Shown here: piece after piece, positions 10,649 to 27,432 of the stretch | Layout: every line of letters begins with the position of its first letter | How positions within the stretch are numbered: position 1 is the first letter of the stretch | Virus record (IMG/VR): IMGVR_UViG_3300024520_000047 | Location: 124,001-188,000 of that record | Direction: 5' to 3' (one strand) | DNA: 64,000 nucleotides | Notes under the pieces: model-generated | What the model saw: only the letters and a program-made list of their open reading frames with translations | Told to the model about the DNA's origin: nothing | The model's database searches: none | Program-made: the position numbers and the translations under genes

Positions 10649-10649
10649 C

Positions 10650-10856: not shown

Positions 10857-10923
10857 AATGTTTTCTTTTACTATAAATATATGGTTAGATGTGAAATTAT
10901 CTAATTATATAATTCTTTTATAG

Positions 10924-13900
10924 TTATGCCAAATTATTTGCCCAAGTGGTGTCATTGGGGTATGGGGTGGGTGTGTATCCATGTGTATTTTTAATTTTAG
11001 CGTTTAAACCGGTTTTTACACGACTCATCGATACGTTCCCGTTGTTATCTTTCTTATCAAATAGTATCTCTATATAAGATAAGGATGTGGGCTTTGATAT
11101 CAAAAATTCCTTTAACTTATCGTTAAGGTTTGTGGTTAATGTACCAGTTGTTAAAGCTTCTTTCATTCTAAAACACGGACATCGTTTATTTGCAAATTCA
11201 TTATGCCCTTTAATCACTTTTTCCCACATTGTAGCTGGAACCCCAGAGTCACCCGAAACCCACTTATTATTCTTTATTTCAAAAAGTGCAACATCATTAT
11301 TGGGGTAATCTCTAAATTTTAAAACTAACTTTGTTGACAAATCAATGAATTTGAGACTAACTACTTCTTTATTAAATAATAACCATAACAATAACCACTC
11401 TAATGAGGTTTTTTGTGCTGTTGTGGGGTAATCCCCCCCTTTAGTGTCGTATGTTCCCATTTTTGAACAGTTAGCTATCATGGAAACTCCCATAGACTCC
11501 GAATTCTTACCTGTTACATGTGCCCCACTTAAATTAGCTGGTCGTGCACCTAACACGTGTCCATCTGTTGAGGAGCCCCCAGTTCCCCGAGAAATTAAAT
11601 AATGGTATCCTATTCCAGTAAATCCTCTATCTTTATGTTGTTTATTTATATTTTCTACTGGGTCTGCACCATAATCAATACCTGCCGTCACATGAACAAT
11701 GACCATTTTAACATTCTCTTTGGATAAACTAGAAGCTTGCCCTGAACTTTTTTCGTTTTCTCCTTCAGGACCAAACCCTCCTCTAGCAACTTTAGTTTGT
11801 GTTTGTGTTTGTTTTTGTCTAATTTTACTTATAAACGACTTATTTACCGTCCCAACTAAATTATCTACTTCTGGTAATCTATGGAATGGCACTCTTACAC
11901 CAGTAAATGTTGTACTCATAGTGTTTGGTTGTATTTGATGTTCCACTTCCAATATTAAATAAGGCCCACTAAACATCGGTACATGTCTTAAATTAAAATA
12001 CATTGTTGGTTGTATGCACACATTTCCCATAGCTTCTATCTTACACATATAAGACCTACTTTTATAAACGTTAAATAAGCTAATTCCTTGTGTTTTAATA
12101 TTATTATCATTAGCTGATTGAGCCATCATTTCTGTCACAATAAATGATTCTGAAGTATTTTTAAATTCACTTTGATTTAAACTTATGGATTTAAATACAC
12201 CCTGATTTTGTATACCAAAATCAACCGCAAATGATACTACTTTATTGCACCGTGCTGGGTCATAACAATCAGAAAATAATGGGTTGTCTGCTGTTCTTCC
12301 AAGCATAAATGAATCATTATTATATTTTGTTTGTGGACCTAAATCTGATAGTTGTGTTGAGGGGTCTCCGACATACTGGACAAGAAACTTGGGTGATGAG
12401 TCTAGGTAGTCTACTTCTAAATGAGTCCCAAAAACAGCATTTGCTTCATCTTGTGTACTTAGTTTTGGGATTTTTCTATTACCATCAGAAGTTATACCAT
12501 AAAAATTAATATAACTAGGCAACGCTAAAAAGTTAAAAAAGTTTCCTTGTAAAATAGAGCCAACCATGGTATATACACTATTATTAGCGTTAGCGTCATT
12601 ACCAAAATTTTTAATTGCATCTGTAGATATAATAGCGACATCCCCAATATCACGATTCGCTCTATCTAAAAATAGAAAATCTTTAAATAATAATTTATTA
12701 TTAAAATTCTCACCAGAAATCCACTTATCATTTAAAGTTTTAAAAACCAGATATTGTTCTAATTTATTTTCATCTGTATTATATATTGCTTTTTCTTGAA
12801 ATTCCTCACCTTGAGTTAAGGCAACTGTCGGTAATTCTGATTTTAAATCAATAAAAAACTGATTTAAGAAATTAAATTGTGCTTCATCAGATTTGTCTAT
12901 AATATAAGTTTTAATATTACTTTTAAAAATATCTGGGGTAAATGGTATTCCCGTTTCTTGAGCTAATAATTTTTGGGTTACATACATTCTTATTACTTTA
13001 CGTAGCAATGTAATGTTGTTACTTGTAAATTCGATATCCATTTCTTTAAAGAAATCTGTAACCAAAGACCCACTATCACTATAAGATAGACCTTTAGTGC
13101 TTCCAGATGATGAATCATCATAAAAACCTACTTCTAATTGTAGTGTTTGCCATGTTTGTGGATTTCCTAGTTGGGAATTAGCTACTGTAAGTTCAGGCGG
13201 TAAATTATTGGAATATGAACCAAAATTAAAATAGTCTGCATCACCAACAATAGTTCTTAATACTCTAATATTGACATCTTTAGGGTTATAAAAATTAAAA
13301 GCTACTTGTTGTTTTAAAAATGTAGTTAATGTGGTGCTAATTTTATTTAATTGTATCTTACCTAAATTAAAACTAAATTCTGTAGTATCTGCTGCCGCAA
13401 CCACTAAATCCTTTTTAATTGTTAACATTTGTCGTAATACCGATTGAAAGGTCTGTACTGTTGGATTAGTAACGAGACCCCCACTAACATCCAATACACT
13501 ATTGTTGTCCGATTCTTTTTTACAGAAATCTAAAAAATAATTTTCAAATACATCTAGTATGTCTGGGGTAAAAATATCAAAAAGTTCTTCTATGCTGCTA
13601 TATTCAGTAGTATTTGTAATATTAAATGAATTTTGACTATCATTTTCATTATCAATAACTTTTAAGTACTGCTTGGGTGTGGGATAAGTGTTACTATTAT
13701 GTTCAAAAAATCCATAACTTGACATTCCCCACGCTAATCGTATAGCTCCGTTATGTGTTATCGGGTTATTAACCAGTTTTTGTGGGTCATTAACTTCAAA
13801 TTGTAGTTGTTGTGTTTTCATTCCACCAGCTGACGGAAATAAAAAATAACTAGGTGTTGTATATCCAGTTAAAAATGAATCTCTGGTTGTATCATAATAA

Positions 13901-16900
13901 TTATACCAAAAAGTACAATTCATATCCGATGTATTATTTGGATTTGCACTACTATTAATAATTAAAGCGTTTGCTTGAGTAACAACCATTGTGTCATCAT
14001 TAATAAATGCATTAATTTCATTACTTGTTATTCCGCTACCGGTAATGTTACTACCATTATATAATAACCTTCCCGTTAAAAAATAACTCATATAGTTATT
14101 TAGTTCTGGGTAAAACCCTACATTAATTTTTGTAAAATTACCACCAATATTCCATTCCCCACCAAAAATTATTGGGGTTTTATTGGGTCCTAAATTTAAA
14201 TTATATTGTGTATTTAAACCTGTGTTATAATTAAAATATTGGTTCGCGTCAAAATTATCCCATACTCCAGCCAACACATCATTTCCTGTTTCTATGTAAG
14301 TTTTATAACGATGCCAAATACTTCCATATTTTAAAATCCACGCATAAGGTAACGGATGAACCGCAGATACCTGATTAAGAACTTTAGCAATATAATCACC
14401 ATATGCATCAACAGATGATGTACTACCAAGTAGTAAAGTTTTCTCCCTTAGGGTTGACAGTGGTAATGAATTTAAAAATAAATAAGCCGAACTGATATAT
14501 GGGTTTGTAACATCATTAATTTCATTCTTAATTCCATCAATTAAAGAATTTAAAAAATATGGTGTATTTAGAATTGATGTGATTTGTTTTTGTCCAACAC
14601 TTCCACTGTATGTTATGCCATAATCTATAGTTCCTTCTGTTAGAAATAACGGATGGTTTTTAGCTGTAGTTAAATTGACGAGTTTAGAATAAAAATTGGT
14701 GTAGGATTCTACAGTATTTTGTAAATCCACATTTCTAGTGGTAATTTGTGCATCAATAAGTGGGGTATAATCCGAATACAACCATTCAGCATCATTATAA
14801 AATTTAGGATTAGTGATTAAACCTTCTATGGTTCCATAGGAACTATACATTTTTTGAGATTTAACAAACGATAGACTTTGACCTATAGAATTCAGTTCTT
14901 GGTAGGTCCCGATATTTACCCCGCCAGCTAAATTACTTTTAGTCCATGACTCCTGAGTATATTGTACAGTAAGAGTACATGCACTATTAACACTATCCCA
15001 CGTGCCTCCTGACAGTAAACACTCAGTTTCTGTAGATAGATACGTAGTCGATAGTGATGTCCCTTCAAAATCGGAAAATGGATATGTTTCTAAGGGAGCT
15101 TCAAACCCTTCTTGTCCCGGTGGGTTAAAAAGAGAATTTTCGAATACTTCTATATCTGGACCTATATCCCCGTCATTACTATAATAATTTACACTACCAA
15201 ATCCTATATTACTCAATAAAGAAAATCTAGAATCATTAATTTTTTCTCTAATGTATGGTGTGTTATACTCATCTCTAATTAATAATTGATAGGCTGTTTG
15301 TGGTGCTAATTTTTGTAATTCCTCTAAAAAAGTATTATAATTAAAATTTTGATTTTTAAAAAATTCTTGTAGGTCAAAATACCCTTTAGTTTTGGTTACT
15401 AAATTTAAAGATTCAAAATGGGCTAAAGAATTTAAAAGTAGTTTTAATTTATCTGTCCCCAACCTATTTATCATTCCAGAAAAAAACATGTGAACTGTGC
15501 TCCTATCCCATATTTCATAATTCATAGAGGTATAAGTTGCTGTCTGATATAGATTATTTTCCAATAAATCAAATGAAGTAATTGGTAACCAATTTTCACC
15601 AACAGTAGCAACGTCAAACTCTACATTAGTGTTTGTGTCTTTTATTTTTTGTGCTTTAAAAAATTCTTCCACAAAATCAACTTCAGGCCATAACACTGGG
15701 TCATATGCTTTTGTAGCACTTATTACTTTTACACTTCCGGGATATGTACTTATAAATGAAGGCACACCATTAGACTCTTCTCTAATATAGTAATGAGGCC
15801 ACGGATAAATAAATTCATCTTCTGGTAATTCAGAACTAAGTGTCTCTTTACCACCACCTTTTACCGCTTCTCTTCTATATGGTGAATTTCTAACAGCAAA
15901 AGCTTTTGTGTGGGTGTCATCCATTAATCTTAAAAAAGTATCGGCCTGAGCTATAATAATAGCGAATATGTTTCTCACCGTAGGTTTAAACCCTAAAGCT
16001 TGAATTACTAATTTATTAACATTTTGTGTTAAATCTTGTTCAATTTTATTCCTTTTTGTATTAAAGATAGAAAAAACATTCCCTATTTTTTCACCAAAAG
16101 TCTCAGCTCTAATGTCAAATACAAACCACTCAGCTGTATACTGGTCAAACCCTTCAGGTCTAGGAGCGATAAAATCTTCATATGTTATAGTAACAGGAAT
16201 TGAGCTGTCCCCATTTTTACCAAAGGTTGGGTTTTTTTCTAATAATTTATTGAATTTATCTATTGTTTGTTTCAATGATTCAATAGCTGATTGTCTATTG
16301 GTTTCATCGTCTAAATATGCTTTTTTCCATCTATAATAAACTTCCTGAGTACCAACATCCTCATAGGGATGATTTGCTGAATCAATAGATGTATCCATAT
16401 ATGTATATTTCCAACCACCTGGGTCTAAAATTTTTTTTCTATAGATGTCCACATTTTTATCATAATCTTCAATATCATCTAAAACTTTTAAATCTTCCTT
16501 CTCTAAGCTTTTTTCTATATCACCTTCTAAACTATTAACTCTTTTGATTAGTTCATCTAAAGTTAAATGTGGTAAATTATCGGGAACTAAATTTAATGAT
16601 TTATAACTGGTATAGATATCCTCCAATACTTGTCTACCCCTGCTAGTCATTACAGTTTTAGGTTCCTCACTGTCGTCGTTTGGGTTATTTACCGTATAGG
16701 TCTTAGAAAACATATATGGAGCTGCTCTTAATTCTTGTAATGTAATATCATTGAGTAACGCAGCTATTCTACCAATAAAAACACAACTTACAATATAGTT
16801 TCCTGTCGCTCCATCAAAAGAAGCGTTAAATGTTTGTAACATTAATTGGTATTTCACGGCTTTACCATAATATCCTTTTAAAATTAAATTAAATAACGGA

Positions 16901-17454
16901 TAAGGTAACTGAAAAAATGCAGCATATGGAGAATTTGGTCCTTGTTCAAATAAAGTTTGACCTCTAACATCAATAAAGGTTATATTTACTTGTGGTATAA
17001 ACCCCTTTTTAATTGTGACGGTAATATTCTCAATTCCAAAAGATTCACTATCTGGTTTTTCTCTAGAAAAATCTTGTCCAGTAAGGGGGTCTTTATACGT
17101 ATTAGAATAATTTTGATTAAGCCCACCTCCGCGAGTACTTCCAACTCCCGTTTGCATGTCAGTCCAATTTGTTGTTAAAAAATCTTTGTTACCGGGTTTA
17201 AGAAAATTTATATCACCTTCAAATATATCAACAAAAGATTCTGGATTTTGACTATCTAAAGCTGCTCCAGAAATTAACTTACTCCTAGGCACAACTCTAG
17301 CTGTTAAATTAGCATATATTGTTAAATTTTCTGGTTCGACTAATCTGGGAACTGCACTACCATTTTCATAAACCTTATTGGGGTCAACTAAAAGTATATT
17401 GTTCTCTGAAAATTCAACTAAAACATTATTACCATTTGAAATCTCATTTGCCAT
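10924..17454 (-). CDS. Giant baseplate hub-like protein with a C-terminal N-acetylmuramoyl-L-alanine amidase (Amidase_2/T7 lysozyme-like) domain
   Basis: Hub-like N-terminus (FGIENITVTI...VNITFIDVRGQTLF); C-terminal IVHVTA...IGYHY...GAHVTGKNSESMGV...GHNEFANKRCPCF; located in the baseplate cluster. Confidence 0.75.
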   Translation of the reverse strand: MANEISNGNNVLVEFSENNILLVDPNKVYENGSAVPRLVEPENLTIYANLTARVVPRSKLISGAALDSQNPESFVDIFEGDINFLKPGNKDFLTTNWTDMQTGVGSTRGGGLNQNYSNTYKDPLTGQDFSREKPDSESFGIENITVTIKKGFIPQVNITFIDVRGQTLFEQGPNSPYAAFFQLPYPLFNLILKGYYGKAVKYQLMLQTFNASFDGATGNYIVSCVFIGRIAALLNDITLQELRAAPYMFSKTYTVNNPNDDSEEPKTVMTSRGRQVLEDIYTSYKSLNLVPDNLPHLTLDELIKRVNSLEGDIEKSLEKEDLKVLDDIEDYDKNVDIYRKKILDPGGWKYTYMDTSIDSANHPYEDVGTQEVYYRWKKAYLDDETNRQSAIESLKQTIDKFNKLLEKNPTFGKNGDSSIPVTITYEDFIAPRPEGFDQYTAEWFVFDIRAETFGEKIGNVFSIFNTKRNKIEQDLTQNVNKLVIQALGFKPTVRNIFAIIIAQADTFLRLMDDTHTKAFAVRNSPYRREAVKGGGKETLSSELPEDEFIYPWPHYYIREESNGVPSFISTYPGSVKVISATKAYDPVLWPEVDFVEEFFKAQKIKDTNTNVEFDVATVGENWLPITSFDLLENNLYQTATYTSMNYEIWDRSTVHMFFSGMINRLGTDKLKLLLNSLAHFESLNLVTKTKGYFDLQEFFKNQNFNYNTFLEELQKLAPQTAYQLLIRDEYNTPYIREKINDSRFSLLSNIGFGSVNYYSNDGDIGPDIEVFENSLFNPPGQEGFEAPLETYPFSDFEGTSLSTTYLSTETECLLSGGTWDSVNSACTLTVQYTQESWTKSNLAGGVNIGTYQELNSIGQSLSFVKSQKMYSSYGTIEGLITNPKFYNDAEWLYSDYTPLIDAQITTRNVDLQNTVESYTNFYSKLVNLTTAKNHPLFLTEGTIDYGITYSGSVGQKQITSILNTPYFLNSLIDGIKNEINDVTNPYISSAYLFLNSLPLSTLREKTLLLGSTSSVDAYGDYIAKVLNQVSAVHPLPYAWILKYGSIWHRYKTYIETGNDVLAGVWDNFDANQYFNYNTGLNTQYNLNLGPNKTPIIFGGEWNIGGNFTKINVGFYPELNNYMSYFLTGRLLYNGSNITGSGITSNEINAFINDDTMVVTQANALIINSSANPNNTSDMNCTFWYNYYDTTRDSFLTGYTTPSYFLFPSAGGMKTQQLQFEVNDPQKLVNNPITHNGAIRLAWGMSSYGFFEHNSNTYPTPKQYLKVIDNENDSQNSFNITNTTEYSSIEELFDIFTPDILDVFENYFLDFCKKESDNNSVLDVSGGLVTNPTVQTFQSVLRQMLTIKKDLVVAAADTTEFSFNLGKIQLNKISTTLTTFLKQQVAFNFYNPKDVNIRVLRTIVGDADYFNFGSYSNNLPPELTVANSQLGNPQTWQTLQLEVGFYDDSSSGSTKGLSYSDSGSLVTDFFKEMDIEFTSNNITLLRKVIRMYVTQKLLAQETGIPFTPDIFKSNIKTYIIDKSDEAQFNFLNQFFIDLKSELPTVALTQGEEFQEKAIYNTDENKLEQYLVFKTLNDKWISGENFNNKLLFKDFLFLDRANRDIGDVAIISTDAIKNFGNDANANNSVYTMVGSILQGNFFNFLALPSYINFYGITSDGNRKIPKLSTQDEANAVFGTHLEVDYLDSSPKFLVQYVGDPSTQLSDLGPQTKYNNDSFMLGRTADNPLFSDCYDPARCNKVVSFAVDFGIQNQGVFKSISLNQSEFKNTSESFIVTEMMAQSANDNNIKTQGISLFNVYKSRSYMCKIEAMGNVCIQPTMYFNLRHVPMFSGPYLILEVEHQIQPNTMSTTFTGVRVPFHRLPEVDNLVGTVNKSFISKIRQKQTQTQTKVARGGFGPEGENEKSSGQASSLSKENVKMVIVHVTAGIDYGADPVENINKQHKDRGFTGIGYHYLISRGTGGSSTDGHVLGARPANLSGAHVTGKNSESMGVSMIANCSKMGTYDTKGGDYPTTAQKTSLEWLLLWLLFNKEVVSLKFIDLSTKLVLKFRDYPNNDVALFEIKNNKWVSGDSGVPATMWEKVIKGHNEFANKRCPCFRMKEALTTGTLTTNLNDKLKEFLISKPTSLSYIEILFDKKDNNGNVSMSRVKTGLNAKIKNTHGYTPTPYPNDTTWANNLA

Positions 17455-17465
17455 TTACTTAAACT

Positions 17466-17873
17466 TTAAAATGGGGTTCCCTTATATGTTATGCCCACCT
17501 GTGTTATGGGTTTACTTCCAATATCTGGTACACTGTAATTATTTGTAGGTAAATTTTTACCATAATAAAAGAAATAATCGTCCGTGGCTTTTTTATAAGC
17601 CTGTAACGAAGCTACTAAAGGATACGGAACAATCAATACTTGACCGTCCCTAATATTCCATTCTAAGCCACCAACCGATGGATTAGCTTGTAATATTAAC
17701 CAACCAAAATACGGACTCTCATAATATTGTTGGCTTATCTTATCCAAACGAGACCTACCTGCCTTATAAACTACTTTTTTATCACTTCCTTTTGAAGGTA
17801 ATTTTAAAAATGGTACAGTAATATTTTCACCATTAATTATAAAATCTGTATATCGGTTATAATAATTTGCCAT
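17466..17873 (-). CDS. Baseplate protein, gp53/tail-X/LysM-like
   Basis: SRLDKISQQYYESPYFGWLILQANP motif. Confidence 0.75.
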   Translation of the reverse strand: MANYYNRYTDFIINGENITVPFLKLPSKGSDKKVVYKAGRSRLDKISQQYYESPYFGWLILQANPSVGGLEWNIRDGQVLIVPYPLVASLQAYKKATDDYFFYYGKNLPTNNYSVPDIGSKPITQVGITYKGTPF

Positions 17874-17875
17874 AG

Positions 17876-20800
17876 TTAAGTAAATTTTAAATTAAAGTCT
17901 GGGGTAGAAGGTTCAGCATTTTTATTAGAATTATATTCTCTTATATTTTTTTCTATGTCTGTGTTGGTGACTTTAGTGTATCCTAGTTTTCTAGTTTTTT
18001 CATTTTTAATAACAACACCCGGTGTGTTAAATTCTGTGGCCGTCGCTAATCCTTGTGTCAGGTAAGATGTACTCTCACTTATAACTTTTTCTATAAAATT
18101 ATCTTTAACAGATACAAGTTGTTCCAAATAATAATTCTCATTTAGTGGTATCCCTTTATTTAAATTAACTTTCATATAAACAATCCAAGGTGGGTTTGTT
18201 GCGGGGTCGATATCTAAGGCATCCTTTAGGTCTTCAAAAAATTCCCCGTCACCAGAATACCCCAACGAATTTTCTTTAAAATAAGAAATATCTTGGCTTA
18301 CTTTACTATCTATAACTGATTTATCTAATATTCCATTAGAAAATAAAAGGTACTCTGTTTTAAAATCTTTTAATCTAAGTGCTTGTTTATTTTCAAAGTC
18401 TACTTCACCATTTGTCAAGCTATAATTTCCAGTAGCGGTTAAATCTGTGGTAGATACATCAGATGTTCCGTCTAGAAAAACTTTTGGGCTGCTACCATTC
18501 ATTAATTTAGAATAACAACTTAATAGGTTAGTAAGATAAAAATAATCGTTACCCAACTCAACTAATGTATTTGATGGAGTGCTTGGTTGGCCTGGTTGTT
18601 GAGATGTTGCGTCCACTGGTGTGCCTCCACTTAGTTGGAATGTTGTGGTTTTTCCTTCTTCTATATAACCATCACCCCCTCTATTAACAACATTTAAGGG
18701 TGTAACATGTTTTAAATATTCTAAGTGTGCACTTCTTATGTTAATTTCAGCTTCTTCTAACTCTCCAGCCACACTGACTCCACCCGCGGTTGCTATATCT
18801 AATTGTTCTTCTAAAAAATCTTTTACTTTTCTTTTTTGAGCGTTAGTGGGGTTCGTGGTATTGAATGCTTTTTGTACACCAGTAGTTTCATTTTCTATTA
18901 GGATTCTATAATTCGCAACTAAATCATTAAGTCTTTTTTGATAATCTAGTGGGATACCCACCAATTCACCCTCTATTGTATCATACGTTAATGGTCCTGT
19001 AGCTCTATAATATTCTCCTGTTTCCCATTGTTTTTCCGCGTACAATAATTCTAATAAACCATAATTATAATTTGTGACTAATTTAAATATTGCCCCATTA
19101 ACTTCTTTTAAATATTTGTAGGCTTTTTCATTTATATCTGTAAACGTTCTTTCGTATTTTACAATACCCGTTTCACCTGTTGATGTGAGTTGTTGTTCTT
19201 CCCTATTTCCAATCATTATACCATCATTTGGCGCTGTATTATCTTCTTCAGTTTGTGCTGCTTCATCTTCTGGATTGGGTGCACCAGTCGCTTGTGTTGT
19301 TTTTATTAAGTCTTGGTTTTGTTTTATCCAAGCTGCCTCATCTGGGTCTTCATCTGTTACCGTAAACACTGCTCGGTCATCGTACATTTCAGTATTCGCA
19401 TAATAATTAAACGATAAAGCGTTTTGTAACCTTGAAACGGGCTCTTTTAATCCTTGTCCACCCAAATATTTAAATGTTATTGCAACACTAGCAATCATTG
19501 GTTGTACCCCAATACCTTCGGGATTTAAATCCAATAAATTATCATCATAAGTAAAACTAACATTATCAATAGCAATTTTAGTGTGGTAGAAATCACCAAC
19601 TCTAAGTACACAAATTGGTGGTGCACCAAAAGCTGTGTTCTTTGCGTCTACAGCTGTAGTAGTCCCACCACCTTCTAATTTGGTGGGTATGGTAGCTCCC
19701 GGTCTAACACATTGATTTAAAAAAGTTAACCGGCTATTTAATCCTTCTGGTGTAATTGAATGGAAGGCTGGTTGAAAGAATTTAAATTTTTGTTTTAGGG
19801 TATCATAAATAAATTCATTTTCTTCTTTTATTAAATCGAAATAATCACATTCTGTAACCATTTTTTGTAAAATTTTATTAGCTATTTCTCTTCTAGTGTT
19901 TTTGTCTTGTAATTTAGCTTCTTTTTTCTTTTTAGCTAAGGGCCTATCTTTTCTTATTGCTGATTTGGGTGGCACTGGGTCTAGTGGTGGGGAGGTAATT
20001 TCAATATCAGACATAGCGACCTTTCTACACTCAGCTGCTGCTTGAGAAAATACAGAACTACTTATTTCAGCATCGTCTTCTGAACTACACTGGGATTCTC
20101 CTAAAGCTTGTGGGGTTGGAAATATTAATCTGCTATCCTCCATTGCTGTTTTAAAAACATTTTTACCTCCTAAAGTATAGTTTTGGAACATTTGTCTGAC
20201 GGAGTCTAACCGTCTTTCCGACAATTTTTTATTATACCCTGAAGAAGCAAGGGAGCTCGCTGTACCCACAAAAGATAACTTAACGGTGTAATTATCCTCT
20301 AAAGCTTTATGTAATTTTTCAGTAAATTCTTTCCACCTAACATTATAGTCATTTCTTGCATCAGTAAACCAAGTAGTTAATGGGGTCTTTTCACTTTCAG
20401 AAACTTGTCCTAAATATCTATTTTCAGTAACTTTATCCTCCCCTAAATAACTTTCACCATTTTTTGACCCACCACCAACAGCTAATACATTAAAAGGCAC
20501 TGTGCTGGTAACCCTGTTGGTATCTGGGTCAGGATAATCATTTTCAAAATAAAACGGTAATCCCTTATAAGCTTCAAAATCTGGTTTCTCTGTAGTTGTT
20601 TCTTTTAAGTCTGGTGTGGTCGTGTCTGCTTCCGCTATTGTGGACGCTTGTGAATTTTGGTTTACATCTCGACTATTCAAAACTTGTGTTATCTCAGCTA
20701 ATTCATTTACTGAAAATTGTTTCCATTTTCGTGCTAAATCATATATGTCATAATGTTTACATCCAGCAAAAAAGGAATCAACTATCGCGTCTGTCTCTGC

Positions 20801-22966
20801 TGGTCCTAATTTTTCTAATTCTTTTCTTACGATAAAATTTAAAATGCTTGGGTGGTCAACTACAATTTTAAAATTTAATGTTCCTGTTCTATTTGTATTA
20901 TTATACGTATAAACCGGTTCCGGTCTTCCCACAAAATTATTTTCTGTCCAATTCGCATTACTGCTTTCATCAACTTTTAAATCATATGGGGGGAACCACA
21001 TTATTCTACCACCATTTGGCCCTTTTTCACAAGTGGATAAGTCATCATAAGTAAATCCTTTTTCTGAACTTGTTCTCCAAGCTAAATTTTCTAGAGAAAA
21101 CATGTATTTTTTAACTTTTCCATTTACTATGTTAGTGGACCCTTTACCACTTTCATCGGTTCTCCATGGTGCAATATTTAAATTATATGGACTATCCAAA
21201 ACAGAATACGTTTCTTTTCTATGGTTCATTTCAGACCTAACTAATCGTCCGTAGGTATAATACGGTATGTCTTTGGTCCATACTCGACAATATTCTGTAG
21301 GTACTTCAGCTCCTCTCCCCACACCATCTGGCTTGTCTGCATTAATTGGGTCTGTGTTAATATATCTTTTAACTCTAGAACCTTTAGTTAATTCCTTATA
21401 TCCGTCATTAAAAACTTTACTAACTTGATTTATAGAGTGGGATACCGATTTTAAAGCTGCACCACCTTTTGGTACCGAATCAATAATTTGTTGGGTAACA
21501 TCCATAATACTATCTTCCCTAAAATCATAATTTGTAGATTTAGTGTTGTCATAATTTGGTGGTGTTTTATATTCTGTGGTGTTGTCGGTAGAACCCTCCA
21601 TTCCTTGTGATGTACCCGGAACTTGGGGCCCCACTCTTTTAACATCATTATTAAATAAACTTGCAACACTATTTAAAAACCCACTTCCTGGTGTTTTATC
21701 AGTATACCATGTAAATCCTCCCGGTACTGTCCCTTGATTAGCGTAAGCGATTCCTTTCATTCCAAAGTCATACTCGTTACTATCAAATTCTTTAGCTACT
21801 GCATCAGGGCCAAATTGTTGTACATAATTTTTTCCAGCATAAGTGTTATCGGGTGGACTAGTCATGTCTGCAACTCTATTTCTAGGTCCTCCAATATATT
21901 GTGGTGGATTTGGTGGAAAATTTCCAACACCCAGTATGCCACCCTTAATAAAATCTATAGCTTCTCCAAATCCAGCACCAATCGCTGTTTGAGCTTGGGC
22001 TCCTTCACCGTATTGTGGACCATAGGTGTTATATCTAATATGTTTAAATAGCTGGGATTTTGTACCCCCTCCAGTGTATTCCAAAAATCTTTGTGACGGG
22101 GATTGCCGTCTACGTGGGATGCCTATTAAACTACCCAAAATTCCTGTAACATCAGAAATTATTTTTTCTGCGGTACCGAGTCCTCTTGGTGGCTCCAAGT
22201 CAAAATAGTCTCCTGGAATATATGAATAAGGTACATATACGCCCGTAAGTCTAGAAACAAAATCTAATCCTTTACCCACCAAAGACTTCGGTGTCGTTAT
22301 ATTGTTGTCTCGTTCAATAAGAGACTCTCTTCCAGTTATAATATCTAAAGCGTTAAATGGGTCTTTTAATGCGTCAATAAAATTAAGTCTACCCATCGTT
22401 TCTTGGTAAAGTTCCTGTGCAATTCTTTCTTGAAACTCTTTCCGTAGTTGGATTGCTCCTTGTTGTTGTAATTCACTATCTTCTAATAGCGTGGTAGATA
22501 ACACCCCTTGTACCGTAACACCCAATAGTATATCCATCGGGGAATAATATTGGGCCACTTGTCTAAATGGGTTTTCACCAAAAAGTCCAGTACCTGTTTC
22601 TGGTGCGGTAAAATTAGGATAAAATCCTTCATTTACCTTCGCCGCGTTTCCAACTCTTATATCGTATATCTGAATCCAATCACCATACCCACCTGGAGGA
22701 CCATAAGCGTTAGCTAAATATGCTTTATCTATATAAAATTCTGCCTGTTCATCAACTGATGGTTGGTCGGTAACGGCCATATCCCTTAAATCTTGTACCC
22801 TAGCAAAATTATTACTAAAATCTGCTGGACCAGTATTTCTTTTATCAAAATATGGAGAAGTTGTGGGATTAGGCAAATTTTTGACTAGCATAATATCCCT
22901 AATAGCTTTTGTTCCACCAAAGCTTAAATTAGGTTTTCTGTTATCGTTTTGTGGTAATCCCGGCAT
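17876..22966 (-). CDS. Large baseplate/tail-tube initiator-like protein with an internal OmpA-like domain
   Basis: WFPPYDLKVDESSNANW..NNFVGRPEPVYTYNNTNRTGTLNF and PPICVLRVGDFYHTKI tube-initiator-like segments; OmpA-like FYFENDYP...GTAS...YNKKLSERR...LGES. Confidence 0.6.
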   Translation of the reverse strand: MPGLPQNDNRKPNLSFGGTKAIRDIMLVKNLPNPTTSPYFDKRNTGPADFSNNFARVQDLRDMAVTDQPSVDEQAEFYIDKAYLANAYGPPGGYGDWIQIYDIRVGNAAKVNEGFYPNFTAPETGTGLFGENPFRQVAQYYSPMDILLGVTVQGVLSTTLLEDSELQQQGAIQLRKEFQERIAQELYQETMGRLNFIDALKDPFNALDIITGRESLIERDNNITTPKSLVGKGLDFVSRLTGVYVPYSYIPGDYFDLEPPRGLGTAEKIISDVTGILGSLIGIPRRRQSPSQRFLEYTGGGTKSQLFKHIRYNTYGPQYGEGAQAQTAIGAGFGEAIDFIKGGILGVGNFPPNPPQYIGGPRNRVADMTSPPDNTYAGKNYVQQFGPDAVAKEFDSNEYDFGMKGIAYANQGTVPGGFTWYTDKTPGSGFLNSVASLFNNDVKRVGPQVPGTSQGMEGSTDNTTEYKTPPNYDNTKSTNYDFREDSIMDVTQQIIDSVPKGGAALKSVSHSINQVSKVFNDGYKELTKGSRVKRYINTDPINADKPDGVGRGAEVPTEYCRVWTKDIPYYTYGRLVRSEMNHRKETYSVLDSPYNLNIAPWRTDESGKGSTNIVNGKVKKYMFSLENLAWRTSSEKGFTYDDLSTCEKGPNGGRIMWFPPYDLKVDESSNANWTENNFVGRPEPVYTYNNTNRTGTLNFKIVVDHPSILNFIVRKELEKLGPAETDAIVDSFFAGCKHYDIYDLARKWKQFSVNELAEITQVLNSRDVNQNSQASTIAEADTTTPDLKETTTEKPDFEAYKGLPFYFENDYPDPDTNRVTSTVPFNVLAVGGGSKNGESYLGEDKVTENRYLGQVSESEKTPLTTWFTDARNDYNVRWKEFTEKLHKALEDNYTVKLSFVGTASSLASSGYNKKLSERRLDSVRQMFQNYTLGGKNVFKTAMEDSRLIFPTPQALGESQCSSEDDAEISSSVFSQAAAECRKVAMSDIEITSPPLDPVPPKSAIRKDRPLAKKKKEAKLQDKNTRREIANKILQKMVTECDYFDLIKEENEFIYDTLKQKFKFFQPAFHSITPEGLNSRLTFLNQCVRPGATIPTKLEGGGTTTAVDAKNTAFGAPPICVLRVGDFYHTKIAIDNVSFTYDDNLLDLNPEGIGVQPMIASVAITFKYLGGQGLKEPVSRLQNALSFNYYANTEMYDDRAVFTVTDEDPDEAAWIKQNQDLIKTTQATGAPNPEDEAAQTEEDNTAPNDGIMIGNREEQQLTSTGETGIVKYERTFTDINEKAYKYLKEVNGAIFKLVTNYNYGLLELLYAEKQWETGEYYRATGPLTYDTIEGELVGIPLDYQKRLNDLVANYRILIENETTGVQKAFNTTNPTNAQKRKVKDFLEEQLDIATAGGVSVAGELEEAEINIRSAHLEYLKHVTPLNVVNRGGDGYIEEGKTTTFQLSGGTPVDATSQQPGQPSTPSNTLVELGNDYFYLTNLLSCYSKLMNGSSPKVFLDGTSDVSTTDLTATGNYSLTNGEVDFENKQALRLKDFKTEYLLFSNGILDKSVIDSKVSQDISYFKENSLGYSGDGEFFEDLKDALDIDPATNPPWIVYMKVNLNKGIPLNENYYLEQLVSVKDNFIEKVISESTSYLTQGLATATEFNTPGVVIKNEKTRKLGYTKVTNTDIEKNIREYNSNKNAEPSTPDFNLKFT

Positions 22967-22998
22967 TTTTTATAAATATCTATTAAAAAGTTATATTA

Positions 22999-25095
22999 TT
23001 ATGTAAGTCCTCTTGAGGATAATACACCACCACCATCATTTATGTTTTGGTAGTCTGGTGTTCCAGTTAAGTTAGTTTCATGTAATTTTTGTTTTAAGTT
23101 AGCCATAAATAACGGTCCGTTTGGTCCTGAAATTAATTGTTGCCAATTAAAGTTAGCTAATTCACCCACACCTTTTAATGTTATTGGTATATTGGTGGGC
23201 ATTCCTTCAAACTTTACAACTATTGGTGTGCTCGTCGCACCACCGCCAATAGCACTATCCATTGTAGACGCTAAATTTTTTCCTCTATATCCACTAATTA
23301 TATCGTCAGGAGCACTTAAAACTGGTCCTTCTGGTCCACCAAATATTAATTTAGATTTTCCATCTGCGGGCATCATAAAATCTTCCTTTTTCTCAACTTT
23401 ACCACCATAAACCACAGTTCCATCAGTTACATTAATTGTAGCTTCATTAGCTGTACTAATTAAATCCCCAACAAGTTCTAATCCAGTCATACCACCGGCT
23501 TCAAGAAAATTCCCACCTTTAGATGCACCACCTAATATATCATCATAACTTGCACCAAATATTGTTTCAATGCCAGCTTTAACACCTTTACCTACTTCAT
23601 CCCCAATTCTACTAAAACTTTCATCTGGTAAAGTATTTTGAATTGTTTCAATGCCAGCTACTTGAATTTTTCCTAACTCTAAATTTTCTATAAGTCCAGC
23701 TTTCATAGCCGCTTGGGGAGTAGTTATTAATGAGTTTTTAATCGCGTCTAAAGCACTTAATTGTTCTAGAGCAATCTCATCACTAGTCATTTCTTGTTGT
23801 TCCCGTACCTTTTTAAGTTCGTCCACCTGTTGTTTGGTGAGGTCGGAAAGATTTACCATTTCTTTATGGCCAGCTTTATCTTCAAGTTCTATCTGATATC
23901 TACCACCTTCACCCATTTTAGCCATACTGGTAACAAACTCTTTCATTCCTTCCGCGTCTGGGCCAGTAAAAGCCGACAAATTCATTTGATTAGAAGCCGC
24001 TTCAAATTTAGCTTGCATTTTAACCATACCAGCAAATTCTTCTTTATTCATTCCTAAAGCATCTGCCATTGCTCTTAGTTGTCGTTGAGCTGTTGGTGGG
24101 AAACTGATTTCACCAGTTTCATCATTAAATACAGCTAAGGACTGTCCAGCGTCAACAATTGCATCTTGAAGACCACCTAAATCATTGGTGGCCATATACA
24201 TTAATTTAAATGGGTCTGCTAAATCACCCACAGCACCACCTATCACTTGTAAGTTTGCCGCTAAATCAATTGCCCCTTCTGGGTCCATAACTTTTTCAGC
24301 TAATGCAGCGGTTGTAGACATACTAATACCCAACCGTTCTGATTGTGCGGCCATTTTTGCAAATCCTTTTACCCCATCTGCAAAATTGTAGGTATTTAAC
24401 ATGTCCATATTTTGAACCATGTTAGACATAAACCCTTCCATGTTAACACCCATAAGTCTAGCTACATCAGCCATCTCCTCAGCACTTTGAATTGATTTTT
24501 CTATGGTGTACCCCATTTGGTCAAATTGTTTGACCATGTCACCCACTTGGTTAACACTAAGATTAAAAGCCTTTTGAAAAACAGCTAATCGTTCTATCTC
24601 TTCGTCAGTAAAAGAGATGTTTCTACCCACCACCTCACCAACACTTGTAAGGGTTTCTTGTAATGATTGTGCATTTATATCATATTTTGCTGTAGCAACA
24701 GATGCGTTAAATATAGCTTTAGTGGTACGTTCTTGTAATATACCGGTTTGGCCTAAGTCTTTTACAATTTCACGTCTAATTCCAGCTTCTTCCTCTAAAA
24801 GATTTAATGTAATACCGGCTACAGTTCCCATGGTATTACTCCCCAGATTCTCTACGGTTTGTTGTACCTCTTTCCACGCGGCTAAAACATCATTTAACTT
24901 TTGAACTCCCGGACCTACACCGGTTACGTCACTCTCTAATTTATCTGCCATACTAGAAGCAGATGTATTTATAATACCAAGTAAGTAGCTCGACCTTTCC
25001 CCTTCGGTTTTGTAACCATTATACTTATCCTTCTGGTCATTGGATAATTTACTCCAATATCCACTTTTTACGTTATGTGTATTTTTTGTGTTCAC
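22999..25095 (-). CDS. Tape-measure-like protein
   Basis: Helical A/G/M/Q-rich 698-aa ORF directly downstream of the tail chaperone pair. Confidence 0.65.
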   Translation of the reverse strand: MNTKNTHNVKSGYWSKLSNDQKDKYNGYKTEGERSSYLLGIINTSASSMADKLESDVTGVGPGVQKLNDVLAAWKEVQQTVENLGSNTMGTVAGITLNLLEEEAGIRREIVKDLGQTGILQERTTKAIFNASVATAKYDINAQSLQETLTSVGEVVGRNISFTDEEIERLAVFQKAFNLSVNQVGDMVKQFDQMGYTIEKSIQSAEEMADVARLMGVNMEGFMSNMVQNMDMLNTYNFADGVKGFAKMAAQSERLGISMSTTAALAEKVMDPEGAIDLAANLQVIGGAVGDLADPFKLMYMATNDLGGLQDAIVDAGQSLAVFNDETGEISFPPTAQRQLRAMADALGMNKEEFAGMVKMQAKFEAASNQMNLSAFTGPDAEGMKEFVTSMAKMGEGGRYQIELEDKAGHKEMVNLSDLTKQQVDELKKVREQQEMTSDEIALEQLSALDAIKNSLITTPQAAMKAGLIENLELGKIQVAGIETIQNTLPDESFSRIGDEVGKGVKAGIETIFGASYDDILGGASKGGNFLEAGGMTGLELVGDLISTANEATINVTDGTVVYGGKVEKKEDFMMPADGKSKLIFGGPEGPVLSAPDDIISGYRGKNLASTMDSAIGGGATSTPIVVKFEGMPTNIPITLKGVGELANFNWQQLISGPNGPLFMANLKQKLHETNLTGTPDYQNINDGGGVLSSRGLT

Positions 25096-25136
25096 TTTTT
25101 ACTCTATTTTACTATAAATAGATGGGGATGAATTTT

Positions 25137-25301
25137 TTAAGCTCTGGATTTGTTTTTTGATTGTTCTATAGATTCCTTTTTTTTCTCAAATTCTTCTACA
25201 AGTTTGCCAACATAATATCGTCGTTCATATATCGGCATTTGTAAAATATCGTTGTGTGAGAAATGTGCAAATTTGATGAGATAGTAGAATTCATCAAGCA
25301 T
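25137..25301 (-). CDS. Small tail/baseplate assembly chaperone (gp51 / GT-like C-part)
   Basis: MLDEFYYLIKFAHFSHNDILQMPIYERRYYVGKL motif; frame open back to 25346, overlapping the upstream chaperone in the +1 frame. Confidence 0.65.
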   Translation of the reverse strand: MLDEFYYLIKFAHFSHNDILQMPIYERRYYVGKLVEEFEKKKESIEQSKNKSRA

Positions 25302-25308
25302 AGATTGC

Positions 25309-26073: not shown

Positions 26074-26092
26074 TTAATCTTGTTTTTATTTA

Positions 26093-26120
26093 ATTTTAAT
26101 TTTATATTTCAATAAGTCAA
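26093..26120 (-). promoter_or_regulatory. Possible promoter for the chaperone gene
   Basis: TTGACT-N16-TAAAAT on the minus strand; AT-rich context weakens it. Confidence 0.35.
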
Positions 26121-26139
26121 TGTTTTATATAAGTACTTA

Positions 26140-26769: not shown

Positions 26770-26777
26770 GTAGGTTT
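26752..26777 (-). terminator. Terminator of the tail tube gene, overlapping the 3' end of the mom-like ORF
   Basis: AAACCTACC-tacgc-GGTGGGTTT followed by further Ts on the minus strand. Confidence 0.65.
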
Positions 26778-26802
26778 AATATAAAATTATGTAAGTTACT
26801 TT

Positions 26803-27291: not shown

Positions 27292-27432
27292 GGTAATATT
27301 TTTGTTTTTCTATTGTTATTTCTTAATAAATATATGGTTTTTGAAAAACCGAGAATAAAACTCTTTACTTTAATATTATAAAATTATAATATGCAAAGCA
27401 TAAAGCTATTCTAATATATAAATATCATAAGC

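What the first reader, a model, noticed from the sequence alone, without database searches (positions are those of the whole stretch)
20020..20560. OmpA-like peptidoglycan-binding domain inserted in a 1696-aa baseplate/tube-initiator protein
Seen: FYFENDYP...LSFVGTASSLASSGYNKKLSERRLDSVRQMF...ALGES...AECRKV follows the OmpA C-terminal pattern (F.FD...GhtD..G...N..LS.RRA..V...G.GE...NRRV). The Arg is kept, but GHTD is replaced by GTAS. Inference: a virion component that anchors on host peptidoglycan. It is encoded beside a LysM-like subunit and an amidase-tipped hub, which would form a bind-and-cut baseplate.
Basis: partly seen in the sequence, partly recalled or inferred. Interest (0 to 1): 0.6.

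Follow-up and report, generated by a model that had tools for sequence, protein, structure and literature searches.

The report
OmpA-like domain inside phage baseplate protein
A 1696-residue central tail-baseplate protein of an uncultured marine jumbo phage carries a genuine but altered copy of the cell-wall-anchoring domain of bacterial OmpA/Pal/MotB, looped out of its tail-tube-like core; the phage tail tip may use it to hold on to the host cell wall, though binding is untested.

Summary
Residues 798-992 of the 1696-aa ORF (window 17876..22966, minus strand) form an OmpA-like domain. The window's own sequence stays under Pfam's cut-off (21 bits against 27.2). A profile of 106 homologs matches only OmpA/Pal/YfiB/OprF/MotB-type chains in the PDB (best E 8.7e-9). 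The AlphaFold model (pLDDT 93.8) superposes on AbOmpA, Pal and TagL at Z 9.5-9.8, rmsd 2.7-2.8 Å.

Three of the four DAP-contact residues are nearly invariant (Asn912, Leu915, Arg919). The fourth, Asp, is Ser904 in 103 of 106 family members.

The domain is a true insertion. The flanks (about 614-722 and about 1110-1170) together form one tail-tube/tube-initiator fold. Compact homologs in Flavobacterium phage immuto, Microcystis phage Mel-JY01 and an uncultured 484-kb phage join the two halves within about 20 residues; here about 390 residues separate them.

Gene order is sheath, tube, gp26-like hub, a 698-aa protein, this protein, a gp53-like LysM protein, then a 2176-aa protein with a T7-lysozyme-type amidase. 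This order recurs in relatives.

Peptidoglycan binding is inferred, not shown. The main rival is a purely structural "glue" role, like the LysM-like domains of other tube initiators. The family has over 2400 metagenomic members, and none turned up among sequenced phage records.

The parts
17876..22966 (-). ORF of 1696 aa (P0001), a central baseplate / tube-junction protein that carries the OmpA-like insertion
   Evidence: One open frame. More than 2400 full-length metagenomic homologs of 1530-1720 aa. Same gene neighbourhood in a 36%-identical relative.
20852..21127 (-). N-terminal half of the tail-tube-fold domain (about residues 614-705; long beta-hairpins at 661-676 and 685-703)
   Evidence: Model 2 secondary structure. 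VIA matches to tube initiators span model residues 55..611. hhalign against compact homologs gives probability 92.6%, E 4.4e-7. Many invariant columns.
20675..20848 (-). Tube-fold helix (about 708-722) followed by the first helical stretch of the insertion (to about 764)
   Evidence: Model 2 helices H148-205. hhalign aligns 'DHPSILN..' with the helix of the compact homologs.
20582..20671 (-). N-side linker (about 766-795), Thr/acid-rich
   Evidence: pLDDT below 50 at model 207-229. Lowest conservation of the region, 0.32.
19991..20575 (-). OmpA-like domain (residues 798-992) with the order beta1-alpha1-beta2-alpha2-beta3-alpha3-beta4 and an extra helical elaboration of about 50 residues between beta1 and alpha1
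20210..20257 (-). Pocket segment Ser904...Asn912..Leu915...Arg919, equivalent to TagL Asp486, Asn494, Leu497 and Arg501
   Evidence: HMM alignments. Residue roles from PMC8253398. Family counts are S 103/106, N 104/106, L 103/106, R 106/106.
19901..19963 (-). C-side linker (about 1002-1022), Pro/Lys-rich
   Evidence: pLDDT below 50 at model 443-463. Low conservation.
19712..19897 (-). Conserved helical stretch that closes the insertion (about 1024-1085)
   Evidence: Model 2 helices H465-526. Conservation 0.74-0.78 and many invariant columns.
19457..19684 (-). C-terminal half of the tail-tube-fold domain (about 1095-1170; strands at 1118-1123, 1127-1140 and 1157-1170)
   Evidence: Colinear weak hhalign matches to the compact homologs with a shared NPEG.GV..PM motif (E 0.023 and 0.077).
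17466..17873 (-). 135-aa gp53-like small baseplate protein with a LysM-like motif
   Evidence: phrog_7145 'baseplate wedge subunit' at E 5.7e-4. The same PHROG hits the positional equivalent in phage immuto at E 1.1e-10. BLASTP against T4 gp53 gives E 0.003.
10924..17454 (-). 2176-aa protein, by gene order the likely hub/spike-side partner
   Evidence: The position after the gp53-like gene mirrors T4 genes 53-5 and the immuto 101-aa gene followed by a 938-aa 'carboxypeptidase'. A 2210-aa equivalent stands in relative L002.
11359..11721 (-). N-acetylmuramoyl-L-alanine amidase domain (T7 lysozyme / PGRP type), residues 1912-2032 of the 2176-aa protein
   Evidence: phrog_822 amidase at E 6.8e-24. 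PDB 1lba/1aro T7 lysozyme at E 7e-7 and 6srt amidase at 1e-6.
22999..25095 (-). 698-aa protein in the position of the tape measure protein
   Evidence: Position only. It corresponds to the immuto 1006-aa 'tail tape measure protein' and to a 709-aa gene in L002. No family or PDB hit.
25309..26073 (-). gp26-like baseplate hub subunit
   Evidence: PF12322 T4_baseplate at 26.0 bits, above the 24.5 cut-off. phrog_150 baseplate hub at E 7e-8.
26803..27291 (-). gp19-like tail tube protein (sub-threshold match)
   Evidence: PF06841 at 20.8 bits against a 28.2 cut-off, E 3.7e-4. A 162-aa gene holds the same position in L002 and in immuto.
29954..33382 (-). Tail sheath (1142 aa), T4 gp18-like C-terminal part
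   Evidence: phrog_23 at E 2e-54. tblastn against sheaths of T4-like phages.

Best explanation
The 1696-aa protein is a central baseplate component of a T4-related jumbo myovirus. Its conserved core (about 614-722 plus about 1110-1170) has the tail-tube fold of tube initiators. That places it at the junction between hub and tube.

Right after the helix on the outer face of that fold, a module of about 390 residues has been inserted. The module consists of a helical stalk, then two flexible and poorly conserved linkers that hold an OmpA-like domain between them.

The domain keeps the ligand crevice of OmpA/Pal/MotB/TagL. Asn912, Leu915 and Arg919 are nearly or fully invariant, while the rest of the domain drifts. 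The Asp that contacts the DAP amine has become Ser904.

The most likely function is as follows. When the sheath contracts and the tube tip enters the periplasm, the tethered domains bind peptidoglycan stem peptides and hold the tip at the wall. If the ring is hexameric like other tube initiators, there are six copies. Meanwhile the amidase domain of the neighbouring 2176-aa protein cuts the same peptides.

Shown here: homology, fold, insertion, residue conservation and gene order. Inferred: the position in the virion, the copy number, ligand binding and the cooperation with the amidase.
For: OmpA-like homology and fold:
- The profile of 106 homologs hits only OmpA-like PDB chains (35 hits, best E 8.7e-9).
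- 71 of 106 homologs hit PF00691.
- The model has pLDDT 93.8. Foldseek probabilities are about 1.0 to OmpA, Pal, YfiB and TagL. VIA gives Z 9.8, rmsd 2.7 Å over 114 residues against AbOmpA with bound peptidoglycan peptide (3td5), and 107 of 108 residues of Pal 1oap align.

Pocket:
- The DAP contacts in TagL are Asp486, Asn494, Leu497 and Arg501 (PMC8253398). The equivalents here are Ser904, Asn912, Leu915 and Arg919.
- In the family, Arg919 is 106/106, Asn912 104/106 and Leu915 103/106. Arg919 and Pro812 are the only invariant columns of a domain whose mean column identity is 23%.
- Conservation concentrated on the crevice suggests a ligand site rather than a protein interface.

Flexible tethering: pLDDT below 50 and low conservation on both sides of the domain.

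Tube fold split by the insertion:
- VIA wide search gives Z 9.0 to Pvc7 (9qgl_7A), 8.9 to phage P1, 8.8 to diffocin and 7.6 to the A-1(L) initiators. Each aligns 120-146 residues spread over model 55..611.
- Compact homologs align to the N-half with probability 92.6%, E 4.4e-7. They align colinearly but weakly to the C-half. Their halves lie about 20 residues apart, against about 390 here.

Context:
- Sheath, tube, gp26-like hub, the 698-aa gene, this gene, the gp53-like gene and the amidase giant follow one another. The order is conserved in a 36%-identical relative and paralleled in phage immuto.
Against: - The Asp that pairs with the DAP amine in canonical domains is Ser in 103 of 106 members. 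By the canonical model, binding should be weakened or changed.
- The window's sequence does not reach Pfam's gathering score.
- The beta1-alpha1 loop, which forms one wall of the DAP pocket, carries an insertion of about 50 residues, so the pocket geometry may differ. I could not inspect the model's coordinates.
- LysM-like domains, another wall-binding fold, serve as protein glue in tube initiators (PMC12546770).
- A 1696-aa subunit is bulky. It is not known whether it travels with the tube tip through the outer membrane or stays in the baseplate outside the cell, where peptidoglycan is out of reach in a diderm host.
- The flanks of model 2 have only moderate confidence (pLDDT about 60-88). 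Z values of 7.6-9 are in the range the tool calls middling.
- The host is unknown.
Confidence: 0.5

Rival explanations
1. Structural glue. The OmpA-like fold has been co-opted as a protein-protein adaptor inside the baseplate. It would link the tube-junction ring to wedge, sheath-initiator or hub proteins and would not bind peptidoglycan, as the LysM-like domains of Pvc7, Afp7, AlgoCIS tube initiators and T4 gp53 do.
For: LysM-like domains of tube initiators make extensive contacts with wedge and sheath-initiator proteins and stabilise the baseplate-trunk interface (PMC12546770). In phage A-1(L) the LysM protein gp16 bridges hub and wedge (PMC10966104). The canonical Asp is lost across the family. 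The domain sits in a protein whose core is a tube-initiator fold.
Against: The domain is the least conserved part of the central region (mean column identity 23% against 43% for residues 560-1180). A multi-partner interface would not be expected to drift like that. What is conserved is the canonical ligand crevice (Asn, Leu, Arg). The linkers on both sides are predicted disordered and are variable, which suits a mobile binding module better than a rigid brace.
Confidence: 0.3
2. Binder of a different envelope ligand. The Ser-for-Asp pocket, with the remodelled beta1-alpha1 loop (near-invariant Asn809, Asp810, Pro812 and Tyr840), recognises something other than free meso-DAP. Candidates are a modified or non-DAP stem peptide, or another carboxylate-bearing envelope polymer of the unknown host.
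For: Ser904 is itself nearly invariant (103/106), which points to selection for a changed specificity rather than decay. New near-invariant residues lie in the loop that forms one wall of the pocket. No cellular stand-alone domain shares this variant at word level.
Against: There is no direct evidence for any ligand. One member (P0039) carries the canonical G-x-T-D, so the two pocket types may be interchangeable. The host and its wall chemistry are unknown.
Confidence: 0.15
3. Chance resemblance or mis-annotation: the motif string looks like OmpA but the region is not an OmpA-like domain.
For: The window's own sequence stays below Pfam's gathering score.
Against: Profile E 8.7e-9 with hits only to OmpA-like chains. 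71 of 106 homologs hit PF00691. A high-confidence model matches whole OmpA-like domains at Z 9.5-9.9.
Confidence: 0.02

Closest known systems
OmpA/Pal/MotB/TagL peptidoglycan-binding domains (Pfam PF00691; e.g. A. baumannii OmpA 3td3/3td5, E. coli Pal 1oap, EAEC TagL 7bba)
   Same: Same fold and strand order (Z 9.5-9.8, rmsd 2.7-2.8 Å). Same core motifs: YN..LS.RR, GE, and (C/N)RRV before the last strand. Asn, Leu and Arg of the DAP site are kept with identical spacing. Two near-invariant Cys residues flank the last helix; E. coli OmpA has a Cys pair in a similar place (the OmpA comparison is from memory).
   Different: Asp of G-H-T-D is Ser (G-S/T-A-S). There is a helical elaboration of about 50 residues between beta1 and alpha1. 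The domain is encoded by a phage and embedded in a virion tail protein, so it would approach the wall from outside the cell rather than from a membrane anchor of the cell itself. It is below Pfam's cut-off for this sequence.
Tube initiators of contractile systems with an accessory LysM-like or alpha/beta domain (Pvc7, Afp7, AlgoCIS Alg7, A-1(L) gp18; T4 gp48/gp54 share the tube fold)
   Same: Tube-fold beta-barrel core (Z 9.0 to Pvc7 9qgl_7A, 7.6 to A-1(L) 8kea_P and AlgoCIS 7aeb_M) combined with a domain of a wall-binding fold type. The gene lies between the presumed tape measure and the LysM/hub genes.
   Different: The accessory domain is OmpA-like rather than LysM-like. It is inserted inside the tube fold on flexible linkers rather than appended at the C-terminus. 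The protein is 5-7 times larger, with about 600 residues before the core and about 500 after it that match no known fold by sequence. No significant sequence-profile match to T4 gp48 or gp54.
Compact homologs: Flavobacterium phage vB_FspM_immuto_3-5A gene 235 (716 aa), Microcystis phage Mel-JY01 WWT39329.1 (2255 aa), and the ORF at L009:1963-6702 of uncultured phage LR756508.1 (1579 aa)
   Same: Homologous tube-fold domain (hhalign probability 92.6%, E 4.4e-7). Same gene order: hub, tape measure, this gene, a small gene of about 100 aa (phrog_7145 confirmed for immuto only), then a large protein that in immuto carries a wall hydrolase.
   Different: Their tube-fold domain is compact (about 200-230 aa), lies at the extreme C-terminus and has no OmpA-like insertion. 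The P0001 family also has an extra C-terminal extension of about 500 aa.
T4 gene 53 - gene 5 pair (LysM-like wedge protein next to the hub lysozyme)
   Same: A small LysM-type gene is directly followed by a large protein with a peptidoglycan hydrolase domain.
   Different: The hydrolase here is an amidase of T7-lysozyme/PGRP type, not a muramidase. The carrier has 2176 aa and shows no detectable similarity to gp5. T4 has no OmpA-like domain.
[quoted passage not shown] Cellulophaga phage phi17:2 R9ZWT8)
   Same: Phage-encoded OmpA-family sequence.
   Different: Those are host-like envelope proteins with a beta-barrel or stand-alone domain proteins, read as auxiliary envelope functions. They are not domains built into a baseplate protein. 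Their structural match to this domain is weak (E 0.04-0.9).

Membership tests
OmpA-like domain superfamily (PF00691, OmpA/Pal/MotB) | Significant sequence match to the family | tested here: met
   The family profile matches 35 PDB OmpA-like chains at E<=0.01 (best 8.7e-9) and nothing else. 71 of 106 homologs match PF00691 at E<0.01 (best 1.4e-8). Several homologs carry precomputed PF00691.
OmpA-like domain superfamily (PF00691, OmpA/Pal/MotB) | Pfam gathering score reached by the window's own protein | tested here: not met
   17.5-22.4 bits against a cut-off of 27.2. This is a divergent member, recognisable only with a profile or by its fold.
OmpA-like domain superfamily (PF00691, OmpA/Pal/MotB) | beta1-alpha1-beta2-alpha2-beta3-alpha3-beta4 fold | tested here: met
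   Model pLDDT 93.8. Z 9.5-9.9, rmsd 2.7-3.0 Å, 107-115 residues aligned, whole targets covered.
Canonical DAP-binding peptidoglycan-binding domain (functional subgroup) | Arg, Asn and Leu of the DAP site (TagL Arg501, Asn494, Leu497) | tested here: met
   Arg919 106/106, Asn912 104/106, Leu915 103/106, with canonical spacing.
Canonical DAP-binding peptidoglycan-binding domain (functional subgroup) | Asp of G-H-T-D that contacts DAP (TagL Asp486) | tested here: not met
   Ser904. It is Ser in 103 of 106 members and Asp in one, P0039. The domain is therefore not filed as a canonical DAP binder.
Canonical DAP-binding peptidoglycan-binding domain (functional subgroup) | Binds peptidoglycan | not testable with these tools
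   Needs a sacculus pull-down or muropeptide binding with the purified domain.
Tail-tube-fold tube initiator (T4 gp48/gp54, Pvc7/Afp7 class) | Tube-type beta-barrel domain | tested here: met
   At least 15 of the 50 best VIA rows are tube initiators, tube proteins, Dit or Hcp, with Z 6.2-9.0 and 105-154 residues aligned across model 55..611. Caveats: flank pLDDT is about 60-88, and Z is in the range the tool calls middling.
Tail-tube-fold tube initiator (T4 gp48/gp54, Pvc7/Afp7 class) | Sequence homology to T4 gp48 or gp54 | tested here: not met
   hhalign E 0.89 and 0.21 with A2; E 0.1 with the compact-homolog profile. No PHROG or Pfam hit for the flanks.
Tail-tube-fold tube initiator (T4 gp48/gp54, Pvc7/Afp7 class) | Gene placed after the tape measure and beside the LysM/hub genes | tested here: inconclusive
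   The order matches T4 (29-48-54; 53-5) and phage immuto. However, the 698-aa 'tape measure' is assigned by position only.
Tail-tube-fold tube initiator (T4 gp48/gp54, Pvc7/Afp7 class) | Forms the ring between hub and first tube disc in the virion | not testable with these tools
   Needs cryo-EM of a virion of this clade.

The most novel reading that the evidence does not exclude
A virion-borne OmpA-like domain with a re-engineered pocket (Ser in place of Asp, and a new loop wall with Asn809, Asp810, Pro812 and Tyr840) acts as a periplasmic anchor or sensor on the tail-tube tip. Its engagement with a host-specific form of the peptidoglycan stem peptide fixes the tube at the wall. It may also license the next step, such as amidase action or DNA release. 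On this reading, wall chemistry would be a second, internal host-range determinant for an abundant clade of marine jumbo phages.
Probability: 0.15. Interest if true: 0.75.

Novelty: new variant of a known kind. Interest (0 to 1): 0.55.

Why it matters
OmpA/Pal/MotB-type domains are known as the way cells fasten their own machines to the wall: the outer membrane, flagellar stators, and type IV, VI and IX secretion systems. Here the same module is built into the centre of a phage baseplate. It is tethered on flexible linkers, it keeps the core of the ligand crevice, and it sits next to a wall-cutting amidase.

If it binds peptidoglycan, it would be a virion device that grips the wall from outside during penetration. 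That step is poorly understood for contractile phages of diderm bacteria.

The family is large, with more than 2400 clusters at 90% identity, on contigs up to about 310 kb, many from marine surveys. It was not found in 50,697 sequenced phage records. It may therefore mark an abundant uncultured jumbo-phage clade, and it offers a small, well-defined domain that can be expressed and tested.

The case also adds a second wall-binding fold, besides LysM, to the accessory domains of tube initiators. That sharpens the question of whether such domains bind the wall or only other tail proteins.

Tried and rejected
- PHROGs gave no family for the whole protein, for the domain or for either flank.
- tblastn of the whole protein (E<=1e-5) and of the two conserved flanks (E<=1) found nothing in the 50,697 phage records. 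The tool notes that records near the window's own genome may be left out.
- A profile word search with the OmpA-like domain alone returned only three fragments of the same family and no cellular stand-alone relative. The origin of the domain stays open.
- A profile word search with the C-half, aimed at finding short relatives without the insertion, was swamped by fragments of the same family.
- Profiles of the N-terminal 600 residues and the C-terminal 527 residues gave no credible PDB match. GET3 at E 0.009 is taken as noise.
- T4 gp48 and gp54 show no significant profile match. T4 gp5 and the immuto 'carboxypeptidase' show no match to the 2176-aa protein. The Mel-JY01 1348-aa protein is tape-measure-like and not a homolog of this protein.
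- The 135-aa and 698-aa neighbours have no PDB match by sequence.
- The ESM Atlas feature search returned only unnamed viral clusters.
- Literature searches found no description of an OmpA-like domain in a phage baseplate or tube initiator.
- Not used: the big representative search, because the family was not left open and the listing would probably be saturated by family fragments; the reads tools; complex prediction; and any genetic code other than table 11.
- I could not inspect model coordinates. The pocket geometry, the Cys-Cys distance and the direction in which the insertion points are therefore untested.
Full report
**Setting.** The window is bases 124001-188000 of a 245,874-bp linear IMG/VR virus record that CheckV estimates as 77% complete. 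G+C is 30-39%. The window encodes a T4-type replication set: ribonucleotide reductase, a DnaB-like helicase, a UvsX-like recombinase, a gp32-like SSB and a DNA polymerase. It also encodes a contractile tail: a 1142-aa sheath with a gp18-like C-terminal part, a gp19-like tube, a gp26-like hub subunit and wedge subunits. It is therefore a jumbo myovirus distantly related to T4-like phages. The closest sheaths in sequenced phages belong to an uncultured 484-kb phage, Microcystis phage Mel-JY01, cyanophages and Flavobacterium phage immuto. Table 11 was used throughout.

**The observation.** ORF 17876..22966 (minus strand) is one open frame of 1696 aa.

The match to OmpA was tested in four ways.
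- Pfam PF00691 on this sequence alone gives 17.5-22.4 bits (E 3e-4 to 5e-3), under the 27.2-bit cut-off.
- In a single-sequence PDB search, 11 of the 12 hits, including the top 11, are OmpA-like domains.
- A word-based search found more than 2400 full-length relatives of 1530-1720 aa. They are 35-73% identical, come from Tara, JGI, ENA and Logan assemblies, and sit on contigs up to about 310 kb. Several are already labelled by JGI's pipeline as 'OmpA-like peptidoglycan-associated protein' or carry a PF00691 hit.
- I aligned the domain from 106 of them (alignment A1). The profile hits 35 PDB sequences at E<=0.01, and every one is an OmpA, Pal, YfiB, OprF, PorE, PomB or MotY-type domain (best 8.7e-9). 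Scanned singly, 71 of the 106 members hit PF00691 at E<0.01 (best 1.4e-8).

**Fold.** AlphaFold2 with A1 gives pLDDT 93.8 and pTM 0.91. The strand and helix order is beta1 (804-806), alpha1 (857-890), beta2 (894-901), alpha2 (909-929), beta3, alpha3 and beta4 (982-991).
- Foldseek's best PDB matches are all OmpA-like, with probability about 1.
- VIA-align gives Z 9.8, rmsd 2.7 Å over 114 residues to A. baumannii OmpA with bound peptidoglycan peptide. It gives Z 9.5 with 107 of 108 residues of E. coli Pal, and Z 9.5 to TagL of the type VI secretion system.
- TM-scores normalised by the query are low (0.3-0.36). The reason is an extra helical elaboration of about 50 residues between beta1 and alpha1.

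**The ligand crevice.** The TagL structure paper lists Asp486, Asn494, Leu497 and Arg501 as the residues that contact DAP. It places DAP between the beta1-alpha1 and beta2-alpha2 loops (PMC8253398). The HMM alignments put Ser904, Asn912, Leu915 and Arg919 at these positions, with the same spacing.

Counts in the 106-member alignment:

| Position | Residue kept | Count |
|---|---|---|
| 919 | Arg | 106/106 |
| 912 | Asn | 104/106 |
| 915 | Leu | 103/106 |
| 904 | Ser | 103/106 (one member, P0039, has the canonical G-Q-T-D) |

Arg919 and Pro812 are the only invariant columns of a domain whose mean column identity is 23%. Asn809, Asp810, Pro812 and Tyr840 are also nearly invariant; the first three lie in the beta1-alpha1 loop just after beta1 and Tyr840 in the ~50-residue elaboration that follows. 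So are Cys960 and Cys980, each present in 102 of 106 members.

The crevice is therefore what selection preserves, with one consistent change, Asp to Ser. I could not inspect coordinates. Whether Asp810 can replace the missing carboxylate is only a hypothesis.

**Is it an insertion?** The flanks are far more conserved than the domain: 0.66-0.83 per-column consensus against 0.32-0.56, with many invariant columns.

A second model of residues 560-1180 has mean pLDDT 72. The OmpA part scores above 90, the flanks about 60-88, and two stretches on either side of the domain (766-788 and 1002-1022) fall under 50.

This model was searched against 48,161 PDB representatives without Foldseek. It gave two families of hits.
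- OmpA-like domains on model residues 230-433.
- Tail-tube-fold proteins aligned over 120-146 residues spread across model 55..611: Pvc7 (Z 9.0), phage P1 (8.9), diffocin (8.8), a Streptomyces CIS (8.6), phiCD508 (8.6), pyocin R2, the A-1(L) 'baseplate initiators' and AlgoCIS (7.6), Dit of phage p2 (7.5), and tube proteins and Hcp (6-7.4).

The tube fold is thus assembled from two segments, about 614-722 and about 1110-1170.

Independent support comes from sequenced phages with the same gene order.
- In Flavobacterium phage immuto the order is sheath, tube, hub (phrog_150), 'tape measure', a 716-aa protein, a 101-aa protein (phrog_7145, the same PHROG as the window's 135-aa protein) and a 938-aa 'carboxypeptidase'.
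- The end of the 716-aa protein has homologs at the ends of a 2255-aa protein of Mel-JY01 and a 1579-aa ORF of LR756508.1. Each is again followed by a gene of about 100 aa.
- A profile of these three compact domains (A6) aligns to residues 581-722 of the window's protein with probability 92.6% and E 4.4e-7.
- The C-half aligns colinearly but weakly (E 0.023 and 0.077), sharing the IGD.Y...NPEG.GV..PM...F pattern.

In the compact proteins the two halves are about 20 residues apart. Here they are about 390 apart, and the break follows the helix of the tube fold.

The inserted module has five parts in order: helices (723-764), a Thr/acid-rich linker, the OmpA-like domain, a Pro/Lys-rich linker and conserved helices (1024-1085). 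The family also has about 600 N-terminal and about 500 C-terminal residues with no recognisable fold by sequence.

**Neighbours.**
- The 135-aa protein (17466..17873) carries a LysM-like motif and matches T4 gp53 weakly.
- The 2176-aa protein (10924..17454) has an amidase domain of T7-lysozyme/PGRP type at residues 1912-2032. Its reading as the hub or spike carrier rests on gene order: T4 53-5, the immuto parallel, and the same order in a 36%-identical relative.
- The 245.9-kb record has no other PF00691-like place.

**Mechanism.** Tube initiators form the ring between hub and tube. Some carry a LysM-like domain that glues the ring to wedge and sheath-initiator proteins (PMC12546770; PMC10966104). 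Two readings follow.

(a) Anchor. After contraction the tethered OmpA-like domains reach the wall and bind stem peptides, next to the amidase. The points in favour are:
- conservation is focused on the crevice;
- the rest of the domain evolves fast;
- the linkers are flexible.

(b) Glue. The fold is a structural adaptor. The points in favour are:
- the LysM precedent;
- the loss of the Asp;
- doubt that so large a subunit passes the outer membrane.

I rate (a) at about 0.5, (b) at about 0.3 and a different envelope ligand at about 0.15. Chance resemblance is excluded.

**Comparison with what is known.**
- By homology and fold, the domain belongs to the OmpA-like superfamily.
- It fails one defining feature of the canonical DAP-binding subgroup (the Asp), and it fails Pfam's cut-off on its own sequence. 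I therefore call it a divergent, phage-specific subfamily and not a canonical peptidoglycan-binding domain.
- The carrier works like a tube initiator by fold and by gene position. No sequence relation to T4 gp48 or gp54 could be shown.
- Phage-encoded OmpA proteins have been reported as host-like envelope genes of huge phages, and stand-alone OmpA-domain proteins exist in some phages. Those are different things.
- BFVD holds one close structural match, a piece of a long uncharacterised protein of an uncultured Caudovirales phage (TM 0.60 by query, E 2.6e-5). It is probably a relative.
- In the held literature I found no description of an OmpA-like domain inside a baseplate or tube-initiator protein.

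**Verdict.** Peptidoglycan anchoring is plausible but unproven, and it has a documented structural alternative. I classify the finding as a new variant of a known kind: a tube-initiator-type protein with an accessory domain of a wall-binding fold. Interest is 0.55.

Noticed in passing
window 10924..17454 (-), amidase at 11359..11721: A 2176-aa protein whose only recognisable part is a T7-lysozyme/PGRP-type N-acetylmuramoyl-L-alanine amidase domain at residues 1912-2032. Pfam found nothing in it at E<0.01. A 2210-aa equivalent stands at the same place in a distant relative (L002).
   Followed up: partly
window 17466..17873 (-): A 135-aa protein with a LysM-like motif (KVVYKAGRSRLDKISQQYYESPYFGWLILQANP...GQVLIVP). 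It matches phrog_7145 and, weakly, T4 gp53. Genes of about 100 aa follow the homologous gene in phages immuto, Mel-JY01 and LR756508.1.
   Followed up: partly
window 22999..25095 (-): A 698-aa protein in the tape-measure position with no Pfam, PHROG or PDB match at all. Its positional equivalents are 709 aa (L002) and 1006 aa (immuto, annotated as tape measure).
   Followed up: partly
window 20087..20089 and 20027..20029 (-): Cys960 and Cys980 of P0001: Two cysteines flanking the last helix of the OmpA-like domain are kept in 102 of 106 family members. This recalls the Cys pair of E. coli OmpA's C-terminal domain (from memory). Their distance in the model could not be measured.
   Followed up: no
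homologs P0039, P0026, P0027, P0087, P0091 (alignment A1): Exceptions within the family. P0039 has the canonical G-Q-T-D with Asp. P0026 and P0027 have an insertion of about 20 residues in the beta2-alpha2 loop and lack the GE and Cys motifs. P0087 and P0091 lack the cysteines.
   Followed up: no
protein P0289: A 125-aa fragment of this family sits on a 427-bp contig that NCBI lists as 'MAG: hypothetical protein, partial [Candidatus Fonsibacter sp.]' (freshwater SAR11). This is either mis-binning by composition or a faint hint at the host range of the clade.
   Followed up: no
window 44136..49433 (-): Three adjacent genes (755, 508 and 490 aa) all hit phrog_347 ('tail terminator'), and two of them also hit phrog_4390. 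They look like tandem paralogs of a virion structural protein.
   Followed up: no
P0001 residues 1-600 and 1200-1696 (window 21167..22966 and 17876..19369): The regions outside the tube-fold and OmpA module have no detectable relative of known structure. The N-part is moderately conserved with many invariant Gly/Pro/aromatic columns. The C-part is the fastest-evolving region (consensus 0.23-0.43).
   Followed up: partly
BFVD entry A0A6J5L6C4_2: A piece of a long uncharacterised protein from an 'uncultured Caudovirales phage' matches the whole extended domain, including the extra helices (TM 0.60, 166 columns). UniProt may therefore already hold a member or near relative of this architecture, unannotated.
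   Followed up: no
window 1..64000: ARAGORN found no tRNA genes in the 64-kb window.
   Followed up: yes
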